Of a DNA stretch of 64,000 nucleotides, positions 646-47,002 are shown piece after piece (within the stretch, counting starts at the first letter, position 1; every line of letters begins with the position of its first letter). The notes under the pieces are model-generated. The model saw only the letters and a program-made list of their open reading frames with translations. It had not been told where the DNA came from and did no database searches. The stretch is taken from IMG/VR virus record IMGVR_UViG_3300042891_000711, positions 1-64,000 of that record; one strand, written 5' to 3'. Position numbers and translations under genes: made by a program.

Positions 646-1605
646 ATGTCAGCAAACGGAATATCAACATTAGCAAGTAAACAGCTTAAACAAGAAGGCA
701 AGCTAGACATTGCCGAAGCCAAACGCCAAGGCAAACTAGTAGCCATTGATGGAACCATTAGCGGGTCTGCGAATTCAAGTCAACCATTTGCACGTACACT
801 TAATGTATTAGATATTAATCTATTACCTACAAAATATTCAGGCAATGTAATTGTTGATAACATCCAAGATGGTAATGTATTAGTAACAGGACGTCCGTGG
901 ACTGATATTGCATGGACATTGCCAGCTGGCATGGACCGCAATGAACCATATAACGGTTCTGGTGGTAGCAATCCTACAGTACCGGGCGCACAATATAAAA
1001 CTGCAGCCGCACGTGGTGTTCCGGCATATTCAGCAAGTGGCATTACCTTTAACGATCTATCAGCGGATGCGCTTACTAGCATTTCAAATGAAGCAGATGG
1101 CTTATATCGTCGCAAATATGTTGGTAAAGTTGTATCAACTTACGGTAATTGGTCCAGCTACGATTCAACATGGTTTGCTGATCCGACACGCGGACCTATA
1201 TCAGAAGCCGTATATGAAGTTGATACCTATGTTAGCTTTGGCTATCGTAGCGACTTGGGCGCAGAAAATGGCTACAGTTTAGAGTGGAAAGGATATCTTA
1301 AAGCACCGGTTACTGGTAACATGCGTTTCTTTGTAGATGTAGATGATGATATTATGGTATGGATTGGAGCAAATGCTTTAGCACCAACTAACTCTAACTA
1401 TCTATTAGCACAAACAGGCGGCACAAGAACAGGCACTAATGGTATTACAGTAGTAGCAGGCAAATACTACCCAGTGCGCATGGCGTTTGTTGAACATGGT
1501 GGTGCAGAACAATTCCAAATCTTTGCTAATAGTTCAGCAGGTGCTACAGTATACAACGGTCAAGACCTAGACTGGGCATACAACACAGCAACCAAAGGCT
1601 ATTAA
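646..1605 (+). CDS. PA14-domain (carbohydrate-binding) protein, probably virion-associated
   Basis: C-terminal PA14 pattern WKGYLKAPVTG..F..DVDD..VWIG...GKYYPVRMAFVEHGG. Confidence 0.7.
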   Translation: MSANGISTLASKQLKQEGKLDIAEAKRQGKLVAIDGTISGSANSSQPFARTLNVLDINLLPTKYSGNVIVDNIQDGNVLVTGRPWTDIAWTLPAGMDRNEPYNGSGGSNPTVPGAQYKTAAARGVPAYSASGITFNDLSADALTSISNEADGLYRRKYVGKVVSTYGNWSSYDSTWFADPTRGPISEAVYEVDTYVSFGYRSDLGAENGYSLEWKGYLKAPVTGNMRFFVDVDDDIMVWIGANALAPTNSNYLLAQTGGTRTGTNGITVVAGKYYPVRMAFVEHGGAEQFQIFANSSAGATVYNGQDLDWAYNTATKGY

Positions 1606-1888: not shown

Positions 1889-2788
1889 ATGTCTATCCAG
1901 TCTGATATAAACAATACCACAAGAACACTTTGGACCAGTAAGACTCCTTACAATGCTAACGTATGGGTAGGTGAAATTGGTCAAATATTCTATAACCCTA
2001 CCTTAGGTTGCTTGAGATTAAGTGACGGAGTTACTGCGGGTGGCCTACCATTATGCGACGGAGCAAACGGCAATGTAGGAGCCACTGGAGCAAATGGTGT
2101 TAGCATTTCAAATGCCACAGTAATTGGTGGCAATTTATTAATCACATTTAGTAACAGTTCTGCTATCTGGGCAGGCAATGTTGTTGGACCACAAGGCATT
2201 CAGGGGAATGTTGGACCACAAGGCATTCAGGGGAATGTTGGACCACAAGGCATTCAGGGGAATGTTGGACCACAAGGCATTCAGGGGAATGTTGGACCAG
2301 CAGGTAATACTTTTATAGGTGGTGACTACGGTTCTTTTTATGATATCACTACACAAACAATATCTAATATTGCCCTAGCGTATAAAGTGCCAATTGGTAA
2401 TACTTCGATCAGCTCCGGAGTTTCTATATCCAATAGCAACATTGTAGTTACTACTAGTGGAGTATACGACATACAATACAGCATACAATTCACTAACACA
2501 GACAATGCTAATCATGATATAGATGTTTGGGTTAGGATTAACAATATAAACTTACCAGACAGCAATAGTAGATTTACTATACACAGTCGAAATAGTAATC
2601 CTGGTGGCGCCGTGGGCAAATTGATAGCAGTCACTCCTATAGTTACTAGCCTTAATGCCAGTGACACTGTACAAATAATGTGGGCCACTGATGATATTGG
2701 TATTGCTATTACCACGTTTGCTGAACAGACTAGCCCAATCAGACCAAAGACACCCGGGGTTATCGTTTATGTTAATCAAATTGCGTAA
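1889..2788 (+). CDS. collagen-like fibre protein with C-terminal BclA/C1q-like beta domain
   Basis: (GPQGIQGNV)n Gly-X-Y repeats; N-terminal GEIG...LRLSDGVTAGG phage fibre motif; C-terminal SGVYDIQYSIQ. Confidence 0.75.
   Translation: MSIQSDINNTTRTLWTSKTPYNANVWVGEIGQIFYNPTLGCLRLSDGVTAGGLPLCDGANGNVGATGANGVSISNATVIGGNLLITFSNSSAIWAGNVVGPQGIQGNVGPQGIQGNVGPQGIQGNVGPQGIQGNVGPAGNTFIGGDYGSFYDITTQTISNIALAYKVPIGNTSISSGVSISNSNIVVTTSGVYDIQYSIQFTNTDNANHDIDVWVRINNINLPDSNSRFTIHSRNSNPGGAVGKLIAVTPIVTSLNASDTVQIMWATDDIGIAITTFAEQTSPIRPKTPGVIVYVNQIA
2183..2299 (+). repeat. 27-bp perfect tandem repeat, about 4.3 copies (collagen-coding)
   Basis: GTTGGACCACAAGGCATTCAGGGGAAT x4 plus GTTGGACCA. Confidence 0.95.
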
Positions 2789-2852: not shown

Positions 2853-4454
2853 ATGTTATTTGGATTATTCATCTTAGCGGTGGCTTTAAGCATTTCAGCC
2901 GTGGCCGCATACTATTCCATAGCTGGATTAACAGCTATTTTTGCCGCGGCAGTAGTGCCTATTATCATTATGGGTGCTGTACTCGAAGTAGGTAAAATTG
3001 CCGCTACTGTATGGCTACATAAATTTTGGCATCGTGCTAACATACAGTTTAAACTTTATCTTGTTCCTGCCATTTTAGTGCTGATGCTGATTACCTCAAT
3101 GGGGATCTTCGGATTTTTGAGCAAGGCCCACATGGATCAAAACATTACAGTAGGCGATAGTGCCGCTCAGGTGCAGATCTTAGATGAAAAGATTAAAACA
3201 GAACAGGATAATATCAGCGTAAACAAACGAGCCCTACAACAAATGGACGCACAAGTGGACCAAATGTTGGGTCGTACCACAGACGATCGGGGTGCCAACC
3301 GTGCTGTACAAATACGTAAGAATCAAGCCAAAGAACGTAAATCATTGCAAGCAGACATCTCAGCCGCACAAAAGAATATATCAGCATTACAAGCAGAACG
3401 TGCTCCACTGGCCGCACAGAATCGTAAGATTGAAGCAGAAGTCGGACCTATCCGTTACATAGCCGCACTTATCTACGGTGATAACCCAGATGCAAACTTA
3501 CTAGAACGTGCTGTACGTTGGGTAATTATCCTACTAGTGTTTGTATTTGACCCATTGGCACTTATCCTTATCCTGGCCGCAGAGCAAACTATTATGTGGG
3601 CTAGAGAAGACAAGCGTAAGAAAGAAGATGAATACGAACTAGACGATGGACAGCTAACCGACGAACAATACGAAAAAATTAAGCAAGAAGCCGATGTTGA
3701 CGATTACATTGCAATGCAAAAGTTCTTTGATGATGGCAAAGAACTAGCCAAGTCAATTGATGACAACGATGGTCGTTTACCTAATAATTATGCTAGCACA
3801 CAAGCATATTTGCATACTCCTTGGGTTTGGCCCGAACGTACTTCAGATGAAGGACTAGTACCTAAACAACAACCAGTTGACGAAGATCCTTTAGATATTC
3901 CTATACCAGAAGGTGAAGAAATGTGGGCTCAAGAGGCTATTGATACAGACACTAGTAAACAAGACTTAGACAATGCTATTAGTTTAATTGCAGAAATGCA
4001 GGCTAAGTTAGATGTGCTACAAGCAGAGCATGATGCTAAACACGAAGAATTGGCACAGATTAAATCAGTTGATCCAGTTACCCTAACAGACCATTTGGGC
4101 AATCCAATTGCCACATATTATCCACAACCACAACAGGTTATCGCACCAGATTTAAGTATCAATGCTGAACTTGATGGTAATAGTGTAAGTGCTGGATTTG
4201 GTACAACCTTCCCAAAAGCTCCAGTCAAGGGTGATCTTTATCTAAGAGTTGACTATTTACCTAGTCGATTATACAAATGGAATGATATCAAGTGGATCGA
4301 AGTAGACAAAACTACAACTGATGTATATTCATATGATACAGAGTATATCAAACATCTAACAAATAAAATAGCATCTGGTGAGTATGATGTGGAATTACTT
4401 ACACCAGCAGAGCAAGAACAAATTCAACAGTATATTAAAAATAATCCTCAATAA
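2853..4454 (+). CDS. membrane protein with coiled coil and acidic C-terminus
   Basis: three N-terminal hydrophobic helices, a heptad region and a fourth TM (VIILLVFVFDPLALILILAA). Confidence 0.7.
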   Translation: MLFGLFILAVALSISAVAAYYSIAGLTAIFAAAVVPIIIMGAVLEVGKIAATVWLHKFWHRANIQFKLYLVPAILVLMLITSMGIFGFLSKAHMDQNITVGDSAAQVQILDEKIKTEQDNISVNKRALQQMDAQVDQMLGRTTDDRGANRAVQIRKNQAKERKSLQADISAAQKNISALQAERAPLAAQNRKIEAEVGPIRYIAALIYGDNPDANLLERAVRWVIILLVFVFDPLALILILAAEQTIMWAREDKRKKEDEYELDDGQLTDEQYEKIKQEADVDDYIAMQKFFDDGKELAKSIDDNDGRLPNNYASTQAYLHTPWVWPERTSDEGLVPKQQPVDEDPLDIPIPEGEEMWAQEAIDTDTSKQDLDNAISLIAEMQAKLDVLQAEHDAKHEELAQIKSVDPVTLTDHLGNPIATYYPQPQQVIAPDLSINAELDGNSVSAGFGTTFPKAPVKGDLYLRVDYLPSRLYKWNDIKWIEVDKTTTDVYSYDTEYIKHLTNKIASGEYDVELLTPAEQEQIQQYIKNNPQ

Positions 4455-4496
4455 ACAACGCATATAAATACATTTCAATAAGGAAGATAGCGATCA

Positions 4497-4733
4497 ATGG
4501 CACAACACGATTCAATGGTAAGAGGCAACACAGTCTACGTTAAGAATGACAACGTAGAACAGGCAATGCGCAAGTTCAAAAAGAACATTCAAGACAGCGG
4601 ACTAATATTAGATTTACGTGCTCGTGAATCATATGAAAAGCCTACACTTAAACGCAAACGCAAAGCGGCTGCGGCAAAACAACGCTGGAAAAAGAAATTA
4701 TCCAGTCAAACACTTCCAGCAAAACTTTATTAA
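4497..4733 (+). CDS. rpsU: ribosomal protein bS21 homolog
   Basis: VYVKNDNVEQAMRKFKK...RESYEKPTLKRKRK; late promoter TATAAATA at 4463. Confidence 0.9.
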   Translation: MAQHDSMVRGNTVYVKNDNVEQAMRKFKKNIQDSGLILDLRARESYEKPTLKRKRKAAAAKQRWKKKLSSQTLPAKLY

Positions 4734-4752
4734 GAATTACTTGTCAAACTAC

Positions 4753-4789
4753 TTGACAACTAATGTAGTATAGTGTATTATGATAAATA
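4753..4789 (+). promoter_or_regulatory. tandem sigma70 and late promoters for dnaK-hsp20
   Basis: TTGACA(4753)-17 nt-TATTAT(4776), then TAAATA(4784). Confidence 0.65.
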
Positions 4790-4793
4790 GTTA

Positions 4794-4852
4794 TGTAGAT
4801 GCCTAATTAGGGTCTACAACTACTACTTGCTTTTTATAAGGAGAAAACAATG
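4794..4852 (+). promoter_or_regulatory. ROSE-like RNA thermometer in the dnaK 5' UTR
   Basis: hairpin TGTAGATGCCT-AATT-AGGGTCTACA, then CTTGCTT-TTTAT-AAGGAG, pairing UUGCU with the SD around a bulged G. Confidence 0.7.
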
Positions 4853-6766
4853 AGCAAAAATACAATCATAGGTATTGACCTAGGCACCACTAATTCTTGT
4901 GTGGCCATTCTTGAAAATAACAAATCACGTGTAATTGAAAATAACGAAGGTGCTCGTACTACACCAAGTATCGTTGCCTACGGCGATGAAATTATTGTAG
5001 GTGCTAGTGCTAAACGTCAAGCAGTTACTAATCCAAAAAACACAATCTACGCCAGCAAACGACTTATTGGTCGTAAGTTTGATGAAGACGCTGTACAAAA
5101 AGACATTGACCTAATGCCTTACAAGATCGTTAAAAACGAAAATGGTGATGCATGGGTTGAAGTCAACGGTGACAAACTAGCACCTCCACAAATTTCAGCA
5201 GAAGTTCTGCGCAAAATGAAATTGACAGCAGAAGACTATTTAGGTTACAGTGTAACGCAGGCAGTTATCACAGTCCCTGCGTACTTTAACGACAGTCAAA
5301 GACAAGCTACTAAAGATGCTGGTAAGATTGCCGGCTTGGAAGTACTCCGTATTATTAACGAGCCTACTGCGGCCGCACTGGCATTTGGTTGCGATAAAGG
5401 TGATAAGAAAGACCGTAAGATTGCTGTGTATGACCTAGGTGGTGGTACATTTGATATCAGTATCATTGAAATCAGCGACATCGACGGCGAAAAACAATTT
5501 GAAGTATTATCTACCAATGGTGATACATTCCTAGGCGGTGAAGACTTTGACCAACGTATTATGGAATACTTGGTAGATGAGTTTAAGAAAGAGTCTGGCA
5601 TTGACTTAAAACAAGATATGCTAGCCCTACAACGTCTTAAAGAATCAGCTGAAAAAGCTAAAATTGAATTGTCAAGTTCAACACAGACAGATGTAAACTT
5701 ACCTTACATCACTGCTGATGCAACCGGTCCTAAACACTTGTCAGTTAAACTAACACGTAGTAAGTTTGAAAGTTTAGTTGAAGATTTAATTAAACGTTCG
5801 ATTGACCCATGTAAAATTGCTGTTAAAGACTCTGGTATTAACATCAGTGACATTGACGATGTTATCTTAGTCGGTGGTCAGACACGTATGCCTAAAGTAC
5901 AAGAAGCTGTTGAAGCATTCTTTGGTCGTGCACCACGTAAAGACGTTAACCCAGATGAAGCTGTGGCAGTTGGTGCGGCAATTCAAGGTGCGGTATTGGG
6001 TGGCGATAAGACTGATGTATTGTTACTAGACGTAACTCCACTATCATTGGGTATTGAAACAATGGGTGGTATTATGACCAAGCTGATTAAGAAAAATACA
6101 ACTATCCCAACCAAAGCAAGCCAAACATTCTCCACAGCAGAAGACAATCAACCAGCTGTGACTGTTATGGTAGCACAGGGTGAGCGTGAGTTTGTCAAGG
6201 ACAACAAAGTACTTGGTCAGTTCAATTTAGAAGGTATCGAACCACAACGTCGTGGCCAACCGCAGATTGAAATTACACTTGACATCGATGCTAACGGTAT
6301 TCTTAAAGTAAGTGCTAAAGATAAAGCAACTGGCAAAGAAAACAAGATTACTATCAAAGCTAACTCAGGTCTAACCGAAGAAGAAATTGATGCAATGGTA
6401 CGTGATGCAGAAGTTAATGCTGATGCAGATAAAAAATTGCGTGAATTAGTTGATGCACGTAACCAAGCTGAAGCACAGGTTCACGATGTTAAGAAAACTG
6501 TAGAAGAAGCTGGTGACGCGGTAACTGCTGAACAGCATACTGCAATCAATGATGCAATTACCGCGGTTGAAGAAGCCATCAAGGGTGATGATGTAGAAGC
6601 TATTAAATCAGCAATGGTAAAATTAGCAGAACCAGTAGCACCAATCTATCAAGCTAAACAAGCACAAGAGTCAGCAACAGTTGAGCCTGGTGCACAAACA
6701 GCTTCAGATGCGCAAGATGGTGTTGTTGATGCTGAATTTACAGAAGTTGACAAGGAGAGTAAATAA
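4850..6766 (+). CDS. dnaK: Hsp70 chaperone DnaK
   Basis: [31 protein letters not shown]-terminal VVDAEFTEV. Confidence 0.98.
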
Positions 6767-7230
6767 TGAAACAAGTTTACACAACCCTTGACATCCCTAG
6801 CATCTATAAGTTTGCTATCGGCTTCGATGAGTTATTTTCACAACTGCAACACTTAGAGCAACGCGGTAAGGATTCGGGCTACCCACCGTTTAATCTAATT
6901 AAACTAAACGAAACTAACTACGCCATTGAATTAGCAGTAGCTGGTTTTGCTGAAGATGAATTAGATGTAGAAATTGAAAACGGTGAATTAGTTATCCGCG
7001 GCACTAACCGTGAAGTCAGCTTAGAAGAAGCTCTTCATGACCTTGAACATAATCCAGTTGAGTATATCCATCGTGGTATTGCGGCTCGTGACTTTGTTAA
7101 ACGCATCAAGTTAGCCGAGGGTGTAGAAGTTAACTCAGCACACGTTAAGAACGGTATCCTAACAGTTAAATTGGAACAATTCACACCTGAACCAGTTAAA
7201 CAAAAGGTTGCAATTTCTTTCGAAAAGTAG
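6766..7230 (+). CDS. small heat shock protein Hsp20/IbpA family
   Basis: IGFD, YPPFNL, ELAVAGF, YIHRGIAARDF, NGILTV. Confidence 0.95.
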   Translation: MKQVYTTLDIPSIYKFAIGFDELFSQLQHLEQRGKDSGYPPFNLIKLNETNYAIELAVAGFAEDELDVEIENGELVIRGTNREVSLEEALHDLEHNPVEYIHRGIAARDFVKRIKLAEGVEVNSAHVKNGILTVKLEQFTPEPVKQKVAISFEK

Positions 7231-7294
7231 TAGTATAGTAATAAGGGTGGAGGAAACTCCACCCATCCTCAACAAAAATACAAAGAGAGAAGAT

Positions 7295-7600
7295 ATGGCC
7301 AAGGCAATTGCAAAAGTTAAAACAACACCAAACTTATCAGTCAAAGAACCCAGTATGTACAAGGTCATTTATATCAATGATAATGTAACAACTATGGAAT
7401 TTGTTATTGAAAGTCTGCGTGTGGTATTTGATATTGCCGTTGACACTGCAATTGAAATTACACAAACTATTCACGAAGAAGGCAGTGCAACAGTTATTGT
7501 GTTACCTTATGAAATGGCAGAACAAAAAGGTGTTGAAGCAACACAACTTGCTAGAGCAAATGGCTTTCCACTTGTAATTAAACTTGAACCTGCTGCATGA
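7295..7600 (+). CDS. clpS: N-degron adaptor ClpS
   Basis: PSMYKVIYINDNVTTMEFVI...IHEEG...AEQK...FPL; start moved to ATG 7295. Confidence 0.9.
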   Translation: MAKAIAKVKTTPNLSVKEPSMYKVIYINDNVTTMEFVIESLRVVFDIAVDTAIEITQTIHEEGSATVIVLPYEMAEQKGVEATQLARANGFPLVIKLEPAA

Positions 7601-8214
7601 GAAACTTGTTAGTAATAGGTGATAGTTTTTGTGATCACAGATATATAGATACAGACTGGCCTGTGTATTTGTCGAACCTATTAAATTTAAATTTAATTGG
7701 TGCCGGTTTACCTGGCGAATCTTGGTGGTTCATAAGAGAACATTTTATGAAAATTTATACATCGGATGAATTTAAAAAAACTGATCTTATTGTATATTGT
7801 CACACTGACCCAAATAGGATTATTGGTACTGATGGTACCTTACGCATAGGAGATGACGATCCGGATGTTATTAAACTTTATTTGACAAAATTACAAAATC
7901 TTAAATTCAATGATTGGTGTTGTCGACAATGGTTCAAAGAATTAAATAATCTATTAGCGGACAAAAAAGTAATACATGTTCAAAATTTTCCTTTAACTTC
8001 TAAATATTTTAATAAGTTAAACGGAGTTAAAGTTGATAGAACGACATTGTACGATTTAAGTTTAAGAGAACTTACCGATTGTAACAAATTCATATATGAT
8101 ACTAGAAACAACCATTTCAGCACAGAAAATAATTTAAAAATTGCAAACATGTTATTTGAAATAGTTAATACAACCACTAATTGGCAGAATGAAACTCGGG
8201 AATTACAATTTTGA
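7597..8214 (+). CDS. SGNH/GDSL-like hydrolase or acyltransferase
   Basis: N-terminal LLVIGDSF and C-terminal D..NHF; AT-rich. Confidence 0.55.
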   Translation: MRNLLVIGDSFCDHRYIDTDWPVYLSNLLNLNLIGAGLPGESWWFIREHFMKIYTSDEFKKTDLIVYCHTDPNRIIGTDGTLRIGDDDPDVIKLYLTKLQNLKFNDWCCRQWFKELNNLLADKKVIHVQNFPLTSKYFNKLNGVKVDRTTLYDLSLRELTDCNKFIYDTRNNHFSTENNLKIANMLFEIVNTTTNWQNETRELQF

Positions 8215-8869: not shown

Positions 8870-9577
8870 TTACTTAGTTCTAGGTCCTAATCCGGGTATC
8901 CAACCTAAACTAATATACTCGTTAAATAACTCAGGTGATATGTATTTTCTATCACATGTTTCCTTGTTATGTACCCAGCGTTTGCCAATAAGTGATTGTT
9001 TAATCTTTTCCGCTTTTTCGTCTGAGCAAGGTGGGCGAACATTCCACCCAGGAGTTCCTGCTCGTAGTTTGCGAGTAACAGATATTTTAGATACTTCTTC
9101 ATCTGTTCGAGCAATACCTTTATTCCAACTTGATTGCCCTTGCCTTGATAATGATAACTTTTCTCTCCATTCGAGAGTAAAATCTTCTGATGTGCGTCCT
9201 GTTTTTCTACCGTAGTTAGGATTGAGCGGACCTGTTAAAGTTTTAAGATATTCTGCTCGTTGTGATTTAAGTTTTTCGTATATAGTAGATGTCATTTTGT
9301 AGTCGTGTTTGCTGTTCTTACCTTTACAGCACATACGCCAAGCCGCGTGAAACATTTTAATTTGTGCCTGGCCTGTAGTCATTTTTGGTAGTAATAAATG
9401 ACAAACAAAGTGTTCTCGTGCTGTTAGGCTTACTAAGTTATCTTTAGAATTATTGCCACCTAAACTTTTTGGTATAATATGATGGCGTTCTATATATGTT
9501 TCTGGTGATAAAGTTCTTGACTTTGCGTTAGATACTATGTTAAAATAATACTTAGAATATTTATTTTGTAAATACAT
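8870..9577 (-). mobile_element. free-standing HNH homing endonuclease with NUMOD-type C-terminal repeats
   Basis: ERHHIIPKSLGGNNSKDNLVSLTAREHFVCHLLL; NPNYG/WNKG/EKIKQS DNA-binding repeats; antisense to neighbours; start ATG 9577 with AAGGAG SD. Confidence 0.85.
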
Positions 9578-9647
9578 TTGCTGTAACTCCTTTTCAGTTA
9601 TAGAGTAGTTGGATATCCCCATATCGCGAACTACATTATTATTTATC
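9578..9647 (-). promoter_or_regulatory. late promoter plus two-hairpin structured leader of the HNH gene
   Basis: minus strand: TAAATA, GTAGTT-CGC-GATAT-GGGG-ATATC-C-AACTAC, then TAACT-GAAAAGG-AGTTA covering the SD. Confidence 0.6.
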
Positions 9648-18065: not shown

Positions 18066-19493
18066 ATGACGATACAACAGGTTAAATCAATAATGTATTA
18101 TGTAGTAATAGCATTTGCGCTATCAATGGCAGGGTTAAAGCAAGCGCATGCCGACAGCACCACTGACATTGTTAACGCACTAGTTATGAAAGGTGTACTT
18201 ACAGAAGAAGAAGGCGCATTATTAAATAAAGGACACAGTGGAGAAACAGGCGCTGCTAAAAAAGAAAAAGACACTACTGTTCATGCGGCTAGTAAAATGA
18301 GCATTCGTGGCTATTTACAAATGCGTAACACTACTATGCTCAGTGGTGATGAAGGAGTTAACCTTTGGTCAGATCGATCTGTAGGTGATAAAAACTCTCT
18401 TGCTGATCAAGACAAAAATTTCTTAATTCGTCGAGCACGTGTGATTATTTCTGGTTCTGCCGGTGACCGTTTAGATTACTACATTCAACCTGACTTTGCT
18501 AGTACAGCAGGTACTACAGGTAACGTAGCGCAATTACGCGATGCTTATGGTGATGTCAACTTGACCAAAGACAAAGTCCACCGCGTTCGTGTTGGACAAA
18601 GTAAAGTACCATATGGCTTTGAAAACTTACAGTCTTCACAAAATCGTCTAGCACTTGATCGTGCTGACGCATTTAATAGTGCGGTACGTGATGAACGTGA
18701 CTTGGGTGCGTTTTACTACTACACACCGGATAATGTGCAAAAACTCTTTAAAGAAATTCAAGATGGCGGACTAAAACACTCAGGCAACTACGGTATGTTT
18801 GGTTTAGGTATATATAACGGCCAAGGTGCTAACCAACAAGATCGTAACGACAACTACCATGTAGTGGCACGTGCTACTTACCCATGGAAAACTGAAAGCG
18901 GTCAAATTTACGAAGCTGGTGTACAGGGTTATACAGGCAAGTATGTAAGAACAGGCAGTGCTTATAGAAAAAATATGGGCAACAATGTCTACGCAACTAA
19001 AACACCAACATTAGAACCAGGCAATACAACTGGATTTAAAGATGAGCGTGTGGGTGTGAGTTTTATGATGTACCCTATGCCTTTCGGTTTGCAAGGTGAG
19101 TGGAACTGGGGTAAAACTCCTGGCTTAGATACTGCTGCTAGTACTGACGGCATTATTAAAGAAACTAATTTAAACGGTGGCTACATTCAAACTATGTATA
19201 AAATTGATAACTTCAAGGTGTTAGATACCAATGGTACATTAATTCCATTTGTTAGATGGCAATACTTTGATGGTGCGTCAAAAGCAGAAACTAACTCACC
19301 AATGAACAAAGTTAACGATTGGGAGTTGGGTGCTGAATGGCAAATTGCTCCAGAAGTTGAACTTGTGGCTTACTATCATATGATGAACCGTAGCAATTTA
19401 GTAACAGGCGCATCAGCTACTACACTAGTAAAACAAGACTATGCTAACTTTAAAGCAGATGCTTTACGGGTTCAGCTACAGTATAACTTTTAA
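18066..19493 (+). CDS. phosphate-selective porin OprO/OprP family
   Basis: signal peptide, LVMKGVLTEEE N-terminus, IRRAR, LRDAY, GQSKVPYGFENLQSS, C-terminal Phe. Confidence 0.85.
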   Translation: MTIQQVKSIMYYVVIAFALSMAGLKQAHADSTTDIVNALVMKGVLTEEEGALLNKGHSGETGAAKKEKDTTVHAASKMSIRGYLQMRNTTMLSGDEGVNLWSDRSVGDKNSLADQDKNFLIRRARVIISGSAGDRLDYYIQPDFASTAGTTGNVAQLRDAYGDVNLTKDKVHRVRVGQSKVPYGFENLQSSQNRLALDRADAFNSAVRDERDLGAFYYYTPDNVQKLFKEIQDGGLKHSGNYGMFGLGIYNGQGANQQDRNDNYHVVARATYPWKTESGQIYEAGVQGYTGKYVRTGSAYRKNMGNNVYATKTPTLEPGNTTGFKDERVGVSFMMYPMPFGLQGEWNWGKTPGLDTAASTDGIIKETNLNGGYIQTMYKIDNFKVLDTNGTLIPFVRWQYFDGASKAETNSPMNKVNDWELGAEWQIAPEVELVAYYHMMNRSNLVTGASATTLVKQDYANFKADALRVQLQYNF

Positions 19494-19519
19494 TAAATTG
19501 CCCCGAAAGGGGCTTTTTA
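19488..19519 (+). repeat. 32-bp direct repeat copy 2 (contains stop codon and terminator)
   Basis: identical to 17100-17131. Confidence 0.95.
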
Positions 19520-19567
19520 TTGGATTAAATAGTAGACAACGGACAAATAAGAGTATAAAATAACTGT

Positions 19568-20359
19568 ATGAAACATATCGGAATTATAGGCTTTGGTTAT
19601 GTAGGCGGCGCAGTCGCAAGTAGCTATGCCAACGAACGAATATTAATCAACGACCCGTACAAATATCCAGATACTTCAATCAGTTATGAAACACTTATGA
19701 AAAAGTGTCGTGTGATATTTGTCTGCGTACCTACTCCGCAATCGGATGATGGCACCTGCAACACCAGCATATTGGAATCGGTATTACAAGGACTAGTGGG
19801 CTACGATGGTTTGGTAATTTGCAAATGTACAGCACCACCCAATGTATATACAAGACTTGAAACAGACCTAGCTCTTAAACTTGTGCATGTTCCAGAATTT
19901 TTAACACAGGCACGTGCAAAGTATGATTATGTTAATCCACATAAAATAGTAGTTGGCTGTAAGAAAAAGTTACGCGACGAAGTTGCTGAAGTATTAATGG
20001 CCAGTGCTATCAACTTTGACCGTGTTAATATTGAATACTGTGACATTGCCACTGCTAGTTTTTTTAAATATTTTGCTAACAATATGTTGGCCATTAAAGT
20101 TGTATTAAACAATGAGTTTAGTGTATTAGCCAGTGCCTTAGATGTAGAGTGGAATGAAGTTGCTCGTATTGCTGCAACTGACTCAAGACTAGGTAATACA
20201 CATTGGGCAGTGCCTGGTCCAGATGGACAAGCTGGATTTGGCGGAGCATGCTTTCCAAAAGACACTGCGGCATTTGCTACAATGGCAAAACCGTATAATA
20301 TACCGTTGTCTGTACTTGATGCAGCTATACAAGCAAACAAGTTAATGAGGGATGAATAA
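19568..20359 (+). CDS. UDP-glucose/GDP-mannose dehydrogenase family, short form lacking the C-terminal domain
   Basis: GIIGFGYVG, CVPTP, PEFL, GFGGACFPKD; own promoter TAGACA-17-TAAAAT. Confidence 0.85.
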   Translation: MKHIGIIGFGYVGGAVASSYANERILINDPYKYPDTSISYETLMKKCRVIFVCVPTPQSDDGTCNTSILESVLQGLVGYDGLVICKCTAPPNVYTRLETDLALKLVHVPEFLTQARAKYDYVNPHKIVVGCKKKLRDEVAEVLMASAINFDRVNIEYCDIATASFFKYFANNMLAIKVVLNNEFSVLASALDVEWNEVARIAATDSRLGNTHWAVPGPDGQAGFGGACFPKDTAAFATMAKPYNIPLSVLDAAIQANKLMRDE

Positions 20360-42710: not shown

Positions 42711-42953
42711 ATGTTAGCACGTAGTTTAATATTTGTGGCACTATTAGCAGTGGGTGTAGCACAAGCAGATGAGCAGAGTAATGTTGTTAATCAACAGCAA
42801 CTAGCTAAACGTTCATATGCGGCACCTGTTAAAGAGAAAGAAGTTCTTGAAGGTGCTAGTGTAACAGAAGAAGTAGTAGTTGATAAAAAACATCAGACGT
42901 TGCGTTTACACATGTTAGGAAAACTTCCATACATGGAAAAAGCAACTGATTAA
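42711..42953 (+). CDS. small secreted protein
   Basis: signal peptide ending AQA; AGGAG SD. Confidence 0.75.
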   Translation: MLARSLIFVALLAVGVAQADEQSNVVNQQQLAKRSYAAPVKEKEVLEGASVTEEVVVDKKHQTLRLHMLGKLPYMEKATD

Positions 42954-42960
42954 AGAAATT

Positions 42961-43295
42961 GTTGTAGAAGCTCTAAAGTAATACATGTTGGACGGCGGTT
43001 CGATTCCGCCCAGGTCCACCAAAAGCATATTGTCACTAAGGTCCCGTAAGGATTATGTCTTTGGCAAGATAGTATGCTTCTGATGGGCCTGACCAGGTTT
43101 CGACAGCGTGAGATAGGATAAGAGTCAACACGTGGGGTCACGTAAAATACAAAACTCGTAAATGCAAACGCAAATACAAAAGACGTAGTTAAAGTGTCAA
43201 TGGGTCGTGGCTTCCGCTTCGGTTCACGCACTGAAGCTTTAGCAGCCTAAGAAACTGCTCGTCCGGGGTAGCTATACCTTGTTACCAAAAATAGT
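42961..43295 (+). ncRNA. ssrA: circularly permuted two-piece tmRNA
   Basis: acceptor piece with T-arm GGCGG-TTCGATT-CCGCC and CAGGTCC-A-CCA (ends 43021) precedes the coding piece starting GGGCCTG (43085); G3-U70 pair; tag frame 43164-43250 ending ALAA; outer ends approximate. Confidence 0.93.
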
Positions 43296-43326
43296 AGAAA
43301 GCTCACTTCGGTGGGCTTTCTTTTTG
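43296..43326 (+). terminator. intrinsic terminator after tmRNA
   Basis: AGAAAGCTCAC-TTCG-GTGGGCTTTCT-TTTT. Confidence 0.85.
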
Positions 43327-43386: not shown

Positions 43387-44535
43387 ATGACAACATACGC
43401 AGATAAAGCAAACAGTTTTTATAATCAGAAAGAGAGTCACTTTATATCCTTGCGCGAACGATTGGTCGAAAGCCTGGGAGATACTTTCGAACCGTTACTA
43501 GATCGAATTGCTGAAGAATTTAAGCGCAGACATACGCAATGGGAACAATTTACTGATTTACAGATTTGTCAAGCAATTATGGTTCCTATGGACAAAATAT
43601 TAATTGACACTACAATGCAACGTAAAGTAAATCTTCAACATATTTTGAATATTTTGCATTATTTTAAAGAAACAATGATCATGGCTATTCAAGTATATGA
43701 AGATCCAACTCGCCCTGGTTATTATATTGCATGGGACGGGCAACACACGGCCCTTGTACTGTATATCTTAGCAACTAAGGTTTTTGGCCAACGTATTGCT
43801 AATTTAATGGTTCCAGTAGTTGTATACAGTATTAAACAAAAAGCAGATATACGTCGTAACTTTATTTTGCTTAATGGTGATGCCAAAGATCCTTTGGATT
43901 TTATTGATATTTTACGTCAGATGATTTGTGGTGTGCGTATCGATGGTAGCGAGGATAAAATTTGGCAAGCTGCCGAACTTAAACAACGCTATTTGGAGAA
44001 AGCTGGATTATTTGCCACCGATGCCAAGTTTGGTGATGAGAATGAATCTGGAGCATTTACTTTGCTTGCAGATACTTTATGTAGTAAAAGTGACAAGACT
44101 CTCAAAGATCCAGAAGTAACTCGAATGTTTGCAGATTATTGGGTATTAATTAACCAAGCTCGACCAGTTGACGCTAAGGAAGCTAGACAGTTATATGAAT
44201 TTTTTGACGCTTGTTTCCGTGAAAATATTACAGTAGATAATGCGTATCTTAAAGAATTTGCGCAGTTTACATTGGATTATTTTGATGCAGATTTTAATTC
44301 AAAAGGTCCGTTTTGGGATAAAGTAAAAATGGCTTATGATAAATGGTATCGTAAGGCTAATCCAGAAGGCGAATTAGATGAACGCACTGGTGAGATTAAG
44401 ATTAAGGGATTCACAAAAGAATGGAAATGTGGAGGGCCGTTCTTACTAGCTCAATTACGTGCGAGTACTAAATTGCAAGTACCTAATTACGATGCAGACA
44501 GTGATTTTGTTCCAGCTAAAAAGGATCTTTGGTAA
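43387..44535 (+). CDS. ParB/DndB-like DGQH-motif protein
   Basis: IDTTMQR...IQVY...YIAWDGQHT...FILLN; own promoter TTGACA-17-TATAAT. Confidence 0.65.
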   Translation: MTTYADKANSFYNQKESHFISLRERLVESLGDTFEPLLDRIAEEFKRRHTQWEQFTDLQICQAIMVPMDKILIDTTMQRKVNLQHILNILHYFKETMIMAIQVYEDPTRPGYYIAWDGQHTALVLYILATKVFGQRIANLMVPVVVYSIKQKADIRRNFILLNGDAKDPLDFIDILRQMICGVRIDGSEDKIWQAAELKQRYLEKAGLFATDAKFGDENESGAFTLLADTLCSKSDKTLKDPEVTRMFADYWVLINQARPVDAKEARQLYEFFDACFRENITVDNAYLKEFAQFTLDYFDADFNSKGPFWDKVKMAYDKWYRKANPEGELDERTGEIKIKGFTKEWKCGGPFLLAQLRASTKLQVPNYDADSDFVPAKKDLW

Positions 44536-45005
44536 TGGCTAAACTACGTACCCCAGACCAAGATAAACATAAGAATTTTAGGTTACTTACTGCGCAGTTG
44601 CGTACTACACCGGTTTGTAAGTTGGAAGATTGTTGCAACCCACTTAGCGACTATGAAGGACCTGGCAGTGATAGTTTATGCCGAGAACATCAACTTGAGC
44701 AAGTCGAGTATGGTGGAATGGGCAAAGCAAGTCGTCCGCATACATTTTACCGTGCTTGGGTATGCACTAAATGTAAGTACGACGCAAGACTCGATCCTGA
44801 GATTTTAGAAATTGAAGATCCATGGGATCAATTGGTAGTTATGCGCGGAGTGATGCATGGTGACCATTTAATTCGTAAGAGTGATGGCGGCAAGGATACT
44901 AAAGAAAACATCAACGCACTTTGCTGTAGATGTCATATGATTAAAACTTATAAAGAGAAAGATTATCTTAAAGGTAATAAAAATAAATCTACAGAAACCC
45001 GTTGA
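44535..45005 (+). CDS. zinc-binding HNH endonuclease
   Basis: CTKC...HGDHLIRKSDGGKDTKENINALCCRCHMIKT; TAATG-coupled to the upstream gene. Confidence 0.85.
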   Translation: MAKLRTPDQDKHKNFRLLTAQLRTTPVCKLEDCCNPLSDYEGPGSDSLCREHQLEQVEYGGMGKASRPHTFYRAWVCTKCKYDARLDPEILEIEDPWDQLVVMRGVMHGDHLIRKSDGGKDTKENINALCCRCHMIKTYKEKDYLKGNKNKSTETR

Positions 45006-45029
45006 CATAAGTAATTATCTGTAATACAC

Positions 45030-45093
45030 TATGTATTTCGTGCCTGACTTAGGGCGTGTACATAATTTTATTTGCTTAATAAAGGAGTAATAA

Positions 45094-45096
<3 letters not shown>
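45030..45096 (+). promoter_or_regulatory. ROSE-like RNA thermometer in the groES 5' UTR
   Basis: hairpin with TGCCT...AGGGC core, then TTATTTGCTT-AATA-AAGGAGTAA pairing UUGCU with the SD. Confidence 0.7.

Positions 45097-47002
<1,906 letters not shown>

What the first reader, a model, noticed from the sequence alone, without database searches (positions are those of the whole stretch)
4794..4852. ROSE-like RNA thermometer in front of phage dnaK-hsp20
Seen: a 5' hairpin (TGTAGATGCCT-AATT-AGGGTCTACA), then CUUGCUU that pairs with AAGGAG leaving a bulged G. Known: U(U/C)GCU pairing to the SD with a bulged G is the ROSE hallmark, normally found before small heat-shock genes of alpha/gamma-proteobacteria. 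Inference: here it heads dnaK, with hsp20 coupled behind by TAATG, so chaperone synthesis would be temperature-gated at translation. dnaK may have inserted between an hsp20 leader and hsp20.
Basis: partly seen in the sequence, partly recalled or inferred. Interest (0 to 1): 0.65.

Follow-up and report, generated by a model that had tools for sequence, protein, structure and literature searches.

The report
ROSE-like leaders on phage chaperone genes
The stretch is the real, conserved 5' leader of a jumbo phage's dnaK-hsp20 operon, built like the short ROSE RNA thermometers of bacterial small heat-shock genes; the same leader type heads hsp20 and groES-groEL in related phages, so these phages may tune their own chaperones at the level of translation, which no experiment has yet tested.

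Summary
Observation confirmed. Window 4794-4852 holds a 5' hairpin, then CUUGCUU facing AAGGAG, 6 nt before the dnaK ATG. Rfam ROSE_3 matches it end to end: 35.9 bits, below the 43-bit cut-off, E 8e-7 for the 219 kb record.

It is not chance. Eighty related viral contigs (DnaK 73-97% identical) carry the same leader. Hairpin I has compensatory changes in 9-10 of its 10 pairs in two sequence sets. The anti-SD motif is nearly invariant.

New here:
- Most relatives have a second copy in the dnaK-hsp20 spacer. The window's clade lost it and fused the genes (TAATG).
- A third copy heads groES-groEL at 45030-45093.
- The leader is widespread before hsp20 in other phages, including cultured cyanophages S-PM2, Syn33 and P-SSM7.
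- Bacterial dnaK loci lack it and have sigma-32-type promoters instead.
- A late-promoter-like NATAAATA box puts the likely RNA start at the base of hairpin I.

Not shown: temperature gating. Nearest-neighbour folding makes the SD hairpin marginal (about -1.8 kcal/mol at 15 C, +0.7 at 37 C) and does not predict it as the optimum.

Verdict: a new, phage-borne variant of ROSE-like leaders; function inferred, moderately interesting.

The parts
4753..4781 (+). Sigma-70-like promoter, TTGACA (4753-4758), 17 nt, TATTAT (4776-4781). The predicted start is near 4788-4790.
   Evidence: 11 of 12 matches, the best in 4000-8000. Conserved in close relatives. Consensus match only.
4782..4789 (+). GATAAATA, a late-promoter-like box (NATAAATA type of T4-like phages). 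The predicted start is near 4795, at the base of hairpin I.
   Evidence: ATAAATA is present 4-5 nt before hairpin I in 55 of 61 unique dnaK leaders. In the window it occurs 16 times against 31 expected, and 10 of the 16 lie 7-60 nt upstream of ORF starts against 16% at random, including virion and tail genes. Motif known from PMC2984593. Relatives encode T4-type Gp23.
4794..4818 (+). Hairpin I: 7 lower pairs, bulged G4801, 3 upper pairs, loop AAUU. Stable, probably a 5' stabiliser and folding aid.
   Evidence: MFE. RNAalifold finds 8 of 9 pairs compensatory. 9 of 10 pairs and 10 of 10 pairs in an independent set show changes on both sides; 0 of 500 shuffles reach the score.
4826..4832 (+). Anti-SD CUUGCUU, containing the ROSE motif UUGCU (4827-4831). 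G4829 is unpaired or faces a G.
   Evidence: Invariant or near-invariant columns. 98.8% of cells pair with the SD across 108 distinct leaders. Variants among 60 dnaK leaders: CUUGCUU 39, CUUACUU 14, CUCGCUU 5, CUCACUU 2.
4838..4843 (+). Shine-Dalgarno AAGGAG, 6 nt before the ATG. Proposed partner of the anti-SD, across the loop UUUAU 4833-4837.
   Evidence: Energy of the isolated hairpin: -3.0, -1.8, -0.7 and +0.7 kcal/mol at 5, 15, 25 and 37 C.
4850..6766 (+). dnaK (638 aa).
   Evidence: Pfam HSP70 E 5e-254. Nearest cellular DnaKs are 67-75% identical, mostly from betaproteobacterial and gammaproteobacterial genomes. Phage DnaKs form one clade.
6766..7230 (+). hsp20 (154 aa, IbpA-like). Its start overlaps the dnaK stop (TAATG), and its own SD AAGGAG lies at 6752-6757 inside dnaK. 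It has no leader of its own in this clade.
   Evidence: It keeps the residues equivalent to Y34 and R93 of E. coli IbpA, with K and R at positions 97 and 98.
45002..45030 (+). Sigma-70-like promoter of groES: TTGACA, 17 nt, TACACT.
   Evidence: Conserved in 17 related groES loci.
45030..45093 (+). Third leader of the same type, before groES. Hairpin 45030-45064 (core CGUGCC/GGGCG at 45039-45056), UUUGCUU 45071-45077, AAGGAG 45082-45087.
   Evidence: Model R1 scores 30.1 bits, E 0.002-0.005. Related groES leaders score 25-32 bits, and their lower stems differ while still pairing, by eye.
45094..47002 (+). groES (45094-45387) and groEL (ATG 45389 to 47002).
   Evidence: Pfam Cpn10 E 2e-32 and Cpn60_TCP1 E 6e-73. 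Start of groEL.

Best explanation
Window 4794-4849 is the 5' untranslated leader of a phage dnaK-hsp20 operon. It is a short, two-hairpin ROSE-like element, related to the leaders of proteobacterial hsp20/ibpA genes.

Transcription starts at or just before the base of hairpin I. It comes from a sigma-70-like promoter and/or a T4-type late promoter box (NATAAATA).

Hairpin I (4794-4818) is stable. It probably protects the 5' end and helps the weak downstream structure to form.

The conserved CUUGCUU (4826-4832) pairs imperfectly with the Shine-Dalgarno AAGGAG (4838-4843), with an unpaired G. This limits 30S binding in the cold and opens as temperature rises, so that DnaK is made mainly under warm or proteotoxic conditions. 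So is Hsp20, whose start overlaps the dnaK stop.

The same device heads hsp20 in most relatives and groES-groEL in this window. The phage chaperone set is therefore tied together by one type of RNA leader instead of the sigma-32 promoters that cellular dnaK genes use.

Shown: the element, its conservation, the covariation of hairpin I, the invariance and complementarity of the anti-SD, its distribution, and its absence from bacterial dnaK loci. Inferred: the transcription start, formation of hairpin II in vivo, and the response to temperature.
For: - Rfam ROSE_3 matches full length at 35.9 bits, E 8e-7 for the record, and is the only hit in 219 kb.
- 80 viral loci with the synteny p533-S21-dnaK-hsp20 all carry the leader.
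- Hairpin I covaries: 9 of 10 pairs in 37 and in 108 distinct sequences, and 10 of 10 in 62 independent ones. No shuffle of 500 reaches the score, and slid controls collapse.
- The anti-SD is nearly invariant while the loop and spacer vary, and 98% of cells pair with the SD.
- Copies occur before hsp20 in 44 of 59 relatives and before groES.
- 54 of 60 model-positive sites found by a bare motif scan of viral contigs precede hsp20.
- Cultured phages S-PM2, Syn33, P-SSM7, C48C1 and Deifobo have it before hsp20.
- Model R1 gives 0 hits in 533 kb of bacterial dnaK loci, which show CTTGAAA...CCCCAT promoters instead.
- Sampled Burkholderiales hsp20 genes show, by eye, a sigma-32 promoter plus a two-hairpin leader with UCGCUU or CUUGCUU.
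- Pseudomonas two-hairpin ROSE elements of the same size (61-62 nt, AUG unpaired) are proven thermometers, and there hairpin II alone suffices (PMC3669281).
Against: - No experimental or transcript data.
- The Rfam gathering score was not reached by the window or by any of 29 related loci tested.
- Hairpin II has only 6 pairs (2 G-C) and lacks the upper G-C clamp that is needed in Pseudomonas putida (PMC3669281).
- Its nearest-neighbour energy is -1.8 kcal/mol at 15 C and +0.7 at 37 C.
- In whole-leader ensembles the ROSE register has a probability near 0 for the window. The predicted SD accessibility changes little between 5 and 42 C when the UTR is folded alone; with coding sequence added it rises from about 0.6-0.8 to 0.9, owing to competing helices rather than the ROSE pairing.
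- Hairpin II cannot covary because the SD is fixed, so conservation of the anti-SD would also fit a protein or RNA binding site.
- 16 of 60 dnaK leaders have A instead of the hallmark G.
Confidence: 0.6

Rival explanations
1. The leader is mainly the target of feedback by the phage's own IbpA-like Hsp20. Free Hsp20 binds the structured leaders of dnaK-hsp20 and groES-groEL and represses translation. Unfolded or aggregating proteins, such as the flood of late structural proteins, titrate Hsp20 away and switch the chaperones on. Temperature would be secondary. This could coexist with a thermometer.
For: [quoted passage not shown] The window's Hsp20 aligns with IbpA and keeps Y34 and R93, with K and R at 97 and 98. 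One leader type is shared by three chaperone units. A late-promoter box places expression alongside virion genes. The weakness of hairpin II in folding would fit a need for a protein partner.
Against: No binding data. The R93-equivalent arginine is common in small heat-shock proteins generally. Most other phage Hsp20s examined have uncharged residues at 97 and 98 (Q/T, T/E), yet they keep the leader. In the cited work, binding was shown only for gammaproteobacterial IbpAs and their own UTRs.
Confidence: 0.2
2. The leader is not a switch. Hairpin I stabilises the mRNA 5' end. The conserved CUUGCUU is kept for another reason, such as a site for a ribosomal or phage protein (for example S1 or the phage S21 encoded just upstream), an RNase, or a standby or enhancer element. 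Translation is constitutive.
For: A 5' hairpin that starts at the predicted transcription start is typical of stabilisers, and this role was also suggested for Pseudomonas hairpin I (PMC3669281). Folding gives no stable SD occlusion for the window. A phage needs chaperones for assembly at any temperature. S21 is syntenic with the operon in most loci.
Against: The conserved heptamer is exactly the complement, with one unpaired base, of the SD next to it, in three gene contexts and in distant phages. The one-sided change U to C turns a G-U pair into G-C. Other late genes of the window have ATAAATA 17-26 nt from the ATG without any such leader. The architecture equals that of proven thermometers.
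Confidence: 0.15
3. The functional helix is not anti-SD/SD. Instead the UUGCUU region pairs with the first codons of dnaK (UUGCUU 4827-4832 with GAGCAA 4852-4857), enclosing the SD and AUG in a loop.
For: It is the ViennaRNA optimum for the window at 20-42 C. Three clades seemed to have different but matching pairs: UUGCUU/GAGCAA, GAUCUU/AAGAUC and UUCUUG/CAAGAA.
Against: A synonymous-recoding test gives p = 0.1-0.7 in all 60 leaders, so the pairing is what the amino-acid sequence and A/U-rich codons give by chance. Such pairing is not evident in the hsp20 and groES leaders (by eye) or in the CUCGCUU dnaK leaders.
Confidence: 0.03

Closest known systems
Short two-hairpin ROSE-like RNA thermometers of Pseudomonas ibpA (Rfam RF02523 ROSE_3; Krajewski et al. 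2013, PMC3669281)
   Same: - Leader of about 55-62 nt, starting with a stable hairpin I.
- The same hairpin core: GAUGCC, loop, GGGUC, with a U-G pair next to a bulged G.
- A single-stranded spacer.
- U(U/C)GCU facing the SD in a short 3' hairpin with an unpaired G.
- AUG unpaired.
- Sits before a heat-shock gene.
- A full-length Rfam alignment.
   Different: - Scores below the Rfam gathering cut-off (35.9 against 43; relatives 26-32 or unscored).
- A/U-rich, with no G-C clamp above the SD core.
- Driven by phage promoters (sigma-70-like and NATAAATA) rather than sigma-32.
- Heads dnaK and groES as well as hsp20.
- Some clades add a middle hairpin or carry A in place of the G.
- Encoded by a virus.
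Classical ROSE / ROSE_2 elements (Bradyrhizobium hspA ROSE1, E. coli ibpA)
   Same: The U(U/C)GCU anti-SD with an unpaired G and non-canonical pairs. Translational control of small heat-shock genes.
   Different: Those have 3-4 hairpins and 70-120 nt, and the last hairpin also covers the AUG. No Rfam hit to those models here.
IbpA self-repression through its own 5' UTR (Miwa/Cheng/Taguchi; PMC10474464)
   Same: An IbpA-like small heat-shock protein is encoded behind a ROSE-type leader. The residues needed for RNA binding are present in the window's Hsp20.
   Different: Nothing here was tested for binding. The leader here also controls dnaK and groES-groEL.
Known phage RNA thermometers (lambda cIII, SPbeta blyA, and a gut phage sigma-70 gene; listed in PMC11182007)
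   Same: Cis-acting leader structures in phage mRNAs that affect translation initiation.
   Different: Those are a two-state switch (cIII) or fourU-type elements. None is ROSE-like, none sits on chaperone genes, and none forms a large conserved family.

Membership tests
ROSE-like RNA thermometers (literature definition) | Lies in the 5' UTR directly upstream of a heat-shock gene, classically a small heat-shock gene | tested here: met
   Lies between promoter-like boxes and the dnaK ATG. dnaK is followed by hsp20. In relatives and many other phages the same leader sits directly before hsp20. dnaK and groES are non-classical targets.
ROSE-like RNA thermometers (literature definition) | Two to four hairpins, with a stable 5' hairpin or hairpins | tested here: met
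   Hairpin I is in the MFE fold and is supported by compensatory changes in 9-10 of 10 pairs. 36 dnaK leaders have two hairpins and 21 have a third, middle hairpin.
ROSE-like RNA thermometers (literature definition) | Conserved U(U/C)GCU motif opposite the SD in the 3'-proximal hairpin | tested here: met
   UUGCU at 4827-4831. Near-invariant across the family. UCGCU variants turn a G-U pair into G-C. 16 of 60 dnaK leaders carry UUACU or UCACU instead.
ROSE-like RNA thermometers (literature definition) | The SD is actually sequestered by imperfect pairing with a bulged or non-canonical G | tested here: inconclusive
   Complementarity is conserved (98% of cells). However, nearest-neighbour folding gives -1.8 kcal/mol at 15 C and does not select this register for the window. 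It does select it for the CUCGCUU leaders L044 and L065 (probability 0.6-0.99). Non-canonical pairs cannot be modelled with these tools.
ROSE-like RNA thermometers (literature definition) | Translation rises with temperature through melting of the SD hairpin | not testable with these tools
   Needs reporter, toeprint or probing experiments. In-silico temperature series were uninformative.
Rfam RF02523 ROSE_3 | Score at or above the curated gathering cut-off (43 bits) | tested here: not met
   Window 35.9 bits. 0 of 20 related loci reach the cut-off. Sub-threshold scores of 31.9 (L019, hsp20 leader) and 26.5 (L081). So it is not filed as a ROSE_3 member, only as a ROSE-like relative.
IbpA-autoregulated 5' UTRs | The cognate small heat-shock protein carries the R93-equivalent arginine, cationic residues at 97 and 98, and an aromatic residue at 34 | tested here: met
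   Alignment with E. coli IbpA and IbpB taken from NC_000913.3: the window's Hsp20 has Y, R, K and R at these positions. Other phage Hsp20s keep Y and R but often lack the charges at 97 and 98.
IbpA-autoregulated 5' UTRs | The protein binds the leader RNA and represses translation | not testable with these tools
   No tool here tests protein-RNA binding.

The most novel reading that the evidence does not exclude
T4-like phages, from marine cyanophages to this freshwater jumbo phage, run a virus-encoded proteostasis regulon held together by one RNA leader. The ROSE-like element on hsp20, dnaK and groES-groEL would be read both by temperature and by the phage's own IbpA-like Hsp20. Hsp20 would act as a sensor of unfolded protein, so that chaperone translation follows the folding load of virion assembly independently of the host's sigma-32 response.
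Probability: 0.15. Interest if true: 0.85.

Novelty: new variant of a known kind. Interest (0 to 1): 0.62.

Why it matters
ROSE elements are the commonest bacterial RNA thermometers, but the papers I could search list only three thermometers in phages, none of them ROSE-like (PMC11182007). No paper found there links cyanophage hsp20 with a thermometer.

Here the element turns out to be a large, covarying family on a core gene of T4-like cyanophages (hsp20). In one jumbo-phage lineage it has spread to dnaK and groES-groEL, genes whose cellular versions are controlled by sigma-32 promoters instead.

If it works as its architecture suggests, it gives phages a host-independent, post-transcriptional way to match chaperone supply to temperature or folding load. 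That bears on how ocean and lake phages cope with seasonal temperature.

It is directly testable in culturable systems, for example S-PM2 on Synechococcus WH7803. It would also give Rfam a new family, and it supplies very short, A/U-rich thermosensor candidates tuned to low temperatures.

Tried and rejected
1. Alternative helix between the anti-SD region and the first dnaK codons. It looked clade-specific, but a synonymous-recoding test gave p = 0.1-0.7. Rejected.

2. Temperature-series folding with ViennaRNA: whole leader with or without coding sequence, the isolated hairpin, and an open-chain 'Tm'. It gave no clear switch, and the 'Tm' measure was confounded by alternative weak folds. Uninformative rather than negative.

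3. Rfam membership. The gathering score is never reached. The weak 'freshwater-2' hit (23.6 bits) rests mainly on the SD-to-ATG stretch.

4. Host origin through Rfam ROSE_3 in 5 and then 151 Burkholderiales genomes. Nothing rang, but only 30-150 first-look candidates per genome were scored and the controls did not ring either, so this says nothing. R1 and ROSE_3 also fail to score the ROSE-like leaders that are visible by eye before 10 Burkholderiales hsp20 genes. The link to host hsp20 leaders therefore rests on inspection only.

5. Terminator of the upstream S21 gene. There is no U-tract, and the hairpin lies downstream of the promoter boxes. Rejected.

6. CIRCE/HrcA operator or a sigma-32 promoter in the leader. 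No match by inspection, and there is no room before the ATG.

8. T4-type capsid gene in the window's own record. Not found in the held 219 kb, which is 62% complete. It was found in complete relatives.

9. Weak R1 hits at 9575-9646 (-) and 19483-19570 (+), E about 0.3. The first at least is only promoter-box plus SD resemblance. Neither is counted.

Full report
**What is at the site.** The window is the first 64 kb of a 218.9 kb IMG/VR virus record, estimated 62% complete. Reading 4400-5100 and listing ORFs gives this order:
- an unknown 533-aa gene (2853-4454);
- ribosomal protein S21 (4497-4733; Pfam E 6e-16);
- a 116-nt gap;
- dnaK (4850-6766; Pfam HSP70 E 5e-254);
- hsp20 (6766-7230; Pfam HSP20), whose ATG overlaps the dnaK stop as TAATG.

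The gap holds, in order:
- TTGACA, 17 nt, TATTAT at 4753-4781, the best sigma-70-type match in 4000-8000;
- GATAAATA at 4782-4789;
- a hairpin at 4794-4818 (ten pairs, U4800-G4812, bulged G4801, loop AAUU);
- a spacer;
- CUUGCUU at 4826-4832;
- the loop UUUAU;
- AAGGAG at 4838-4843;
- the ATG at 4850.

**Is it more than chance?** Yes.
- Of 4227 Rfam families scanned over 4650-4950 at a permissive threshold, the best match is ROSE_3 (RF02523, the two-hairpin Pseudomonas ibpA thermometer). It aligns over its whole length to 4793-4855 at 35.9 bits, E 4.9e-6.
- The same hit is the only one in the whole 219 kb record, E 8.3e-7.
- The score is below Rfam's gathering cut-off of 43, so this is a significant resemblance, not a curated membership.
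- The upper part of hairpin I (GAUGCC, loop, GGGUC, with the bulged G) equals the ROSE_3 consensus.

**Comparative evidence.**
- A search of viral contigs with the DnaK protein returned 80 loci at 73-97% identity. They share the synteny 533-aa gene, S21, dnaK, hsp20 (tblastn).
- Their upstream regions almost all read the same way: (G/T)ATAAATA, 4-5 nt, a hairpin with a GCC...GGG apex, sometimes a second hairpin (GGGCA...UGCCC), then C-U-(U/C)-(G/A)-C-U-U, 2-6 nt, AAGGAG, and about 6 nt to the ATG.
- On a plain MAFFT alignment of 37 two-hairpin leaders, RNAalifold recovers hairpin I with compensatory changes in 8 of 9 pairs.
- Counting a structure that I specified gives changes on both sides in 9 of 10 hairpin-I pairs. 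No shuffle of 500 reaches the covariation score, and the score collapses when partners are slid by one to three columns.
- A covariance model built from this alignment (R1) aligned 150 matches, 108 of them distinct, with the same result.
- An independent set of 62 leaders gave 10 of 10 pairs with double changes. This set was found without using hairpin I: a bare anti-SD/SD/ATG pattern scan plus five cultured phages.
- The anti-SD/SD helix cannot covary because the SD is fixed. It is nonetheless 98-99% paired, and its only variation (U to C) turns a G-U pair into G-C.
- R1 gives no hit at E <= 1 in 533 kb around 80 bacterial dnaK genes. The model is therefore specific, and the leader did not come in with a cellular dnaK.
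- Those bacterial loci show CTTGAAA...CCCCAT sigma-32-type promoters.

**Three extensions beyond the finding.**

1. Most relatives carry a second copy of the leader in the dnaK-hsp20 spacer, directly before hsp20 (R1 up to 56 bits).
   - Some of these copies have their own TTGACA-17-TATAAT promoter.
   - In others, hairpin I overlaps the last dnaK codons and the stop.
   - On a quick maximum-likelihood DnaK tree with nine bacterial outgroups, the phage proteins form one clade (SH-aLRT 100).
   - The second leader is present in 44 of 59 rows, spread all over the tree.
   - The compact junction is confined to the window's subclade plus a few scattered rows.
   - The window's junction (AAGGAG, 6 nt, TAATG) looks like the result of a deletion between the AAGGA in the 5' arm of the hsp20 leader's hairpin and the AAGGA of its SD, as seen in L012-type loci. 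This step is inference.
   - So dnaK was not dropped between an hsp20 leader and hsp20. Both genes had leaders, and the window's clade lost one.

2. The window holds a third copy before groES-groEL. It has a promoter at 45002-45030, a hairpin at 45030-45064, UUUGCUU at 45071-45077 and AAGGAG at 45082-45087. groES runs 45094-45387 and groEL 45389-47002. Seventeen related groES loci keep it, and their lower stems differ while still pairing, by eye.

At 60 model-positive sites in 59 of the 80 loci returned, the downstream gene is hsp20 in 54 cases, dnaK in 3 and a small unknown ORF in 3.
   - Hsp20 homologues occur in 508 deposited phage genomes, mostly Kyanoviridae.
   - R1 hits directly before hsp20 in Syn33 (38 bits), S-PM2 (29.9), P-SSM7 (28.9), C48C1 (23.7) and Pseudomonas phage Deifobo (21.8).
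   - In each of these the hairpin, CUCGCUU or CUUGCUU, and AAGGAG are visible; Deifobo reads UCUUGCG in place of the heptamer.

**Where the RNA probably starts.**
- ATAAATA is under-represented in the window: 16 occurrences against 31 expected, and every shuffle has at least 16.
- Ten of the 16 lie 7-60 nt upstream of an ORF start on the same strand, against 16% for random positions. These ORFs include genes with virion-protein and tail-fibre PHROG matches.
- NATAAATA is the late promoter of T4-like cyanophages (PMC2984593).
- Complete relatives of this phage (329 kb with terminal repeats, and 383 kb) encode a T4-type Gp23 capsid protein, E 1e-83.
- By the T4 rule, which I take from my own knowledge, the start would fall near 4795, the first pairs of hairpin I. 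The sigma-70-like promoter would start the RNA about 6 nt earlier.
- Both predicted starts lie upstream of UUGCU.

**Mechanism, and how far it is supported.**
- The architecture equals that of the Pseudomonas ibpA elements: 61-62 nt, two hairpins, AUG free, hairpin II melting between 25 and 42 C, and hairpin II sufficient on its own (PMC3669281).
- The most likely reading is therefore a temperature-labile mask on the SD. Hairpin I would act as a stabiliser or folding aid.
- Thermodynamic modelling does not back this up for the window:
  - The isolated hairpin II has -3.0, -1.8, -0.7 and +0.7 kcal/mol at 5, 15, 25 and 37 C.
  - In the full leader, other weak registers win. One is a U-run/A-run helix; once coding sequence is included, another is UUGCUU with codons 1-3.
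  - The predicted SD accessibility barely changes between 5 and 42 C when the UTR is folded alone. With coding sequence added it rises from about 0.6-0.8 to 0.9, but through those competing helices.
- Leaders with CUCGCUU do fold into the ROSE register with high probability (L044 and L065).
- The competing helix with the coding region is no more than codon composition gives by chance (p 0.1-0.7).
- Known ROSE hairpins depend on non-canonical pairs that these energy rules ignore. I therefore treat the folding as uninformative and put the thermometer function at about 0.55-0.6. I put the existence of a selected, ROSE-related leader at above 0.9.

**A rival worth testing.**
- E. coli, Cedecea and Vibrio IbpA bind their own ROSE-type UTRs and repress translation until aggregates titrate them away. 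This needs R93 and charges at positions 97 and 98 (PMC10474464).
- The phage Hsp20 is IbpA-like and keeps Y34 and R93, with K and R at 97 and 98. Many other phage Hsp20s lack the two charges.
- A shared leader on dnaK-hsp20 and groES-groEL, expressed with late genes, would fit a folding-load sensor.
- Nothing here tests binding.

**Origin.**
- The nearest cellular DnaKs are 67-75% identical, mostly from betaproteobacterial and gammaproteobacterial genomes. The window also carries a betaproteobacterial-type permuted tmRNA. The host is probably a betaproteobacterium (inference).
- Ten sampled Burkholderiales hsp20 genes, about 40% identical to the phage's, show by eye a sigma-32 promoter followed by a two-hairpin leader with UCGCUU or CUUGCUU. 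Two of them share the GGAUGC...GGUCC core.
- Neither R1 nor ROSE_3 scores these host leaders. The descent of the phage leader from host hsp20 leaders is therefore plausible but not demonstrated.

**Novelty and verdict.**
- In the searchable literature only three phage RNA thermometers are listed (lambda cIII, SPbeta blyA, a gut-phage sigma-70 gene), and none is ROSE-like (PMC11182007).
- Searches combining RNA thermometer, phage, dnaK and hsp20, or cyanophage, hsp20 and thermometer, found nothing relevant.
- hsp20 is a core gene of T4-like cyanophages (PMC3037559).
- The finding is real. Its identification as ROSE-like is right in kind, though it is not a member by Rfam's threshold.
- Its evolutionary story needs correcting, and its scope is much wider than one locus.
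- I class it as a new, phage-borne variant of a known kind. Function is inferred, not shown.

Noticed in passing
window 42915-43321 (+): A phage-encoded tmRNA of the permuted, betaproteobacterial type (Rfam tmRNA_permuted 111 bits; beta_tmRNA 97.7 bits, above its cut-off). It hints at a betaproteobacterial host.
   Followed up: no
window 4497-4733 (+): A phage ribosomal protein S21 lies just upstream of the dnaK leader. S21 and the unknown 533-aa gene before it are syntenic with dnaK-hsp20 in most of the 80 related loci, although variable inserts separate S21 from dnaK in many.
   Followed up: partly
window, 16 sites (e.g. 312, 2839, 4464, 4783, 47065, 48196): ATAAATA occurs half as often as expected (16 against 31). 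It sits almost only in intergenic DNA, 17-26 nt before ORF starts, like a T4-type late promoter. The dnaK copy is the exception, at 60 nt, because of the leader.
   Followed up: partly
L012:2723-2790, L026:4905-4967, L035:4881-4950: In some relatives, hairpin I of the hsp20 leader is encoded inside the last dnaK codons, or it spans the dnaK stop codon. Ribosomes finishing dnaK would then unfold the hsp20 leader, a possible form of coupling.
   Followed up: no
L025, L029, L032, L042, L047, L051 and others (dnaK leaders): One clade has a three-hairpin leader with an extra GGGCA...UGCCC stem. It also has CUUACUU, that is, an A in place of the hallmark unpaired G of ROSE.
   Followed up: partly
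L278:4143-4209 (+), L217:2801-2874 (-): Good matches to the leader model (53.6 and 42.9 bits) precede small ORFs of 65 and 90 aa that are not Hsp20, DnaK or GroES. These may be further members of the regulon.
   Followed up: no
window 8870-9622 (-) and 44529-45005 (+): Two HNH homing-endonuclease genes. The second ends just before the groES promoter and leader.
   Followed up: no
window 646-1605 and 1889-2788 (+): A protein with PA14/GLEYA domains and a collagen-repeat, BclA-like protein. They are probably surface or fibre proteins of the virion.
   Followed up: no
window 45385-45391: groES and groEL are separated by a single base (TAA T ATG). Like dnaK-hsp20, the pair is probably translated as one unit behind one leader.
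   Followed up: no
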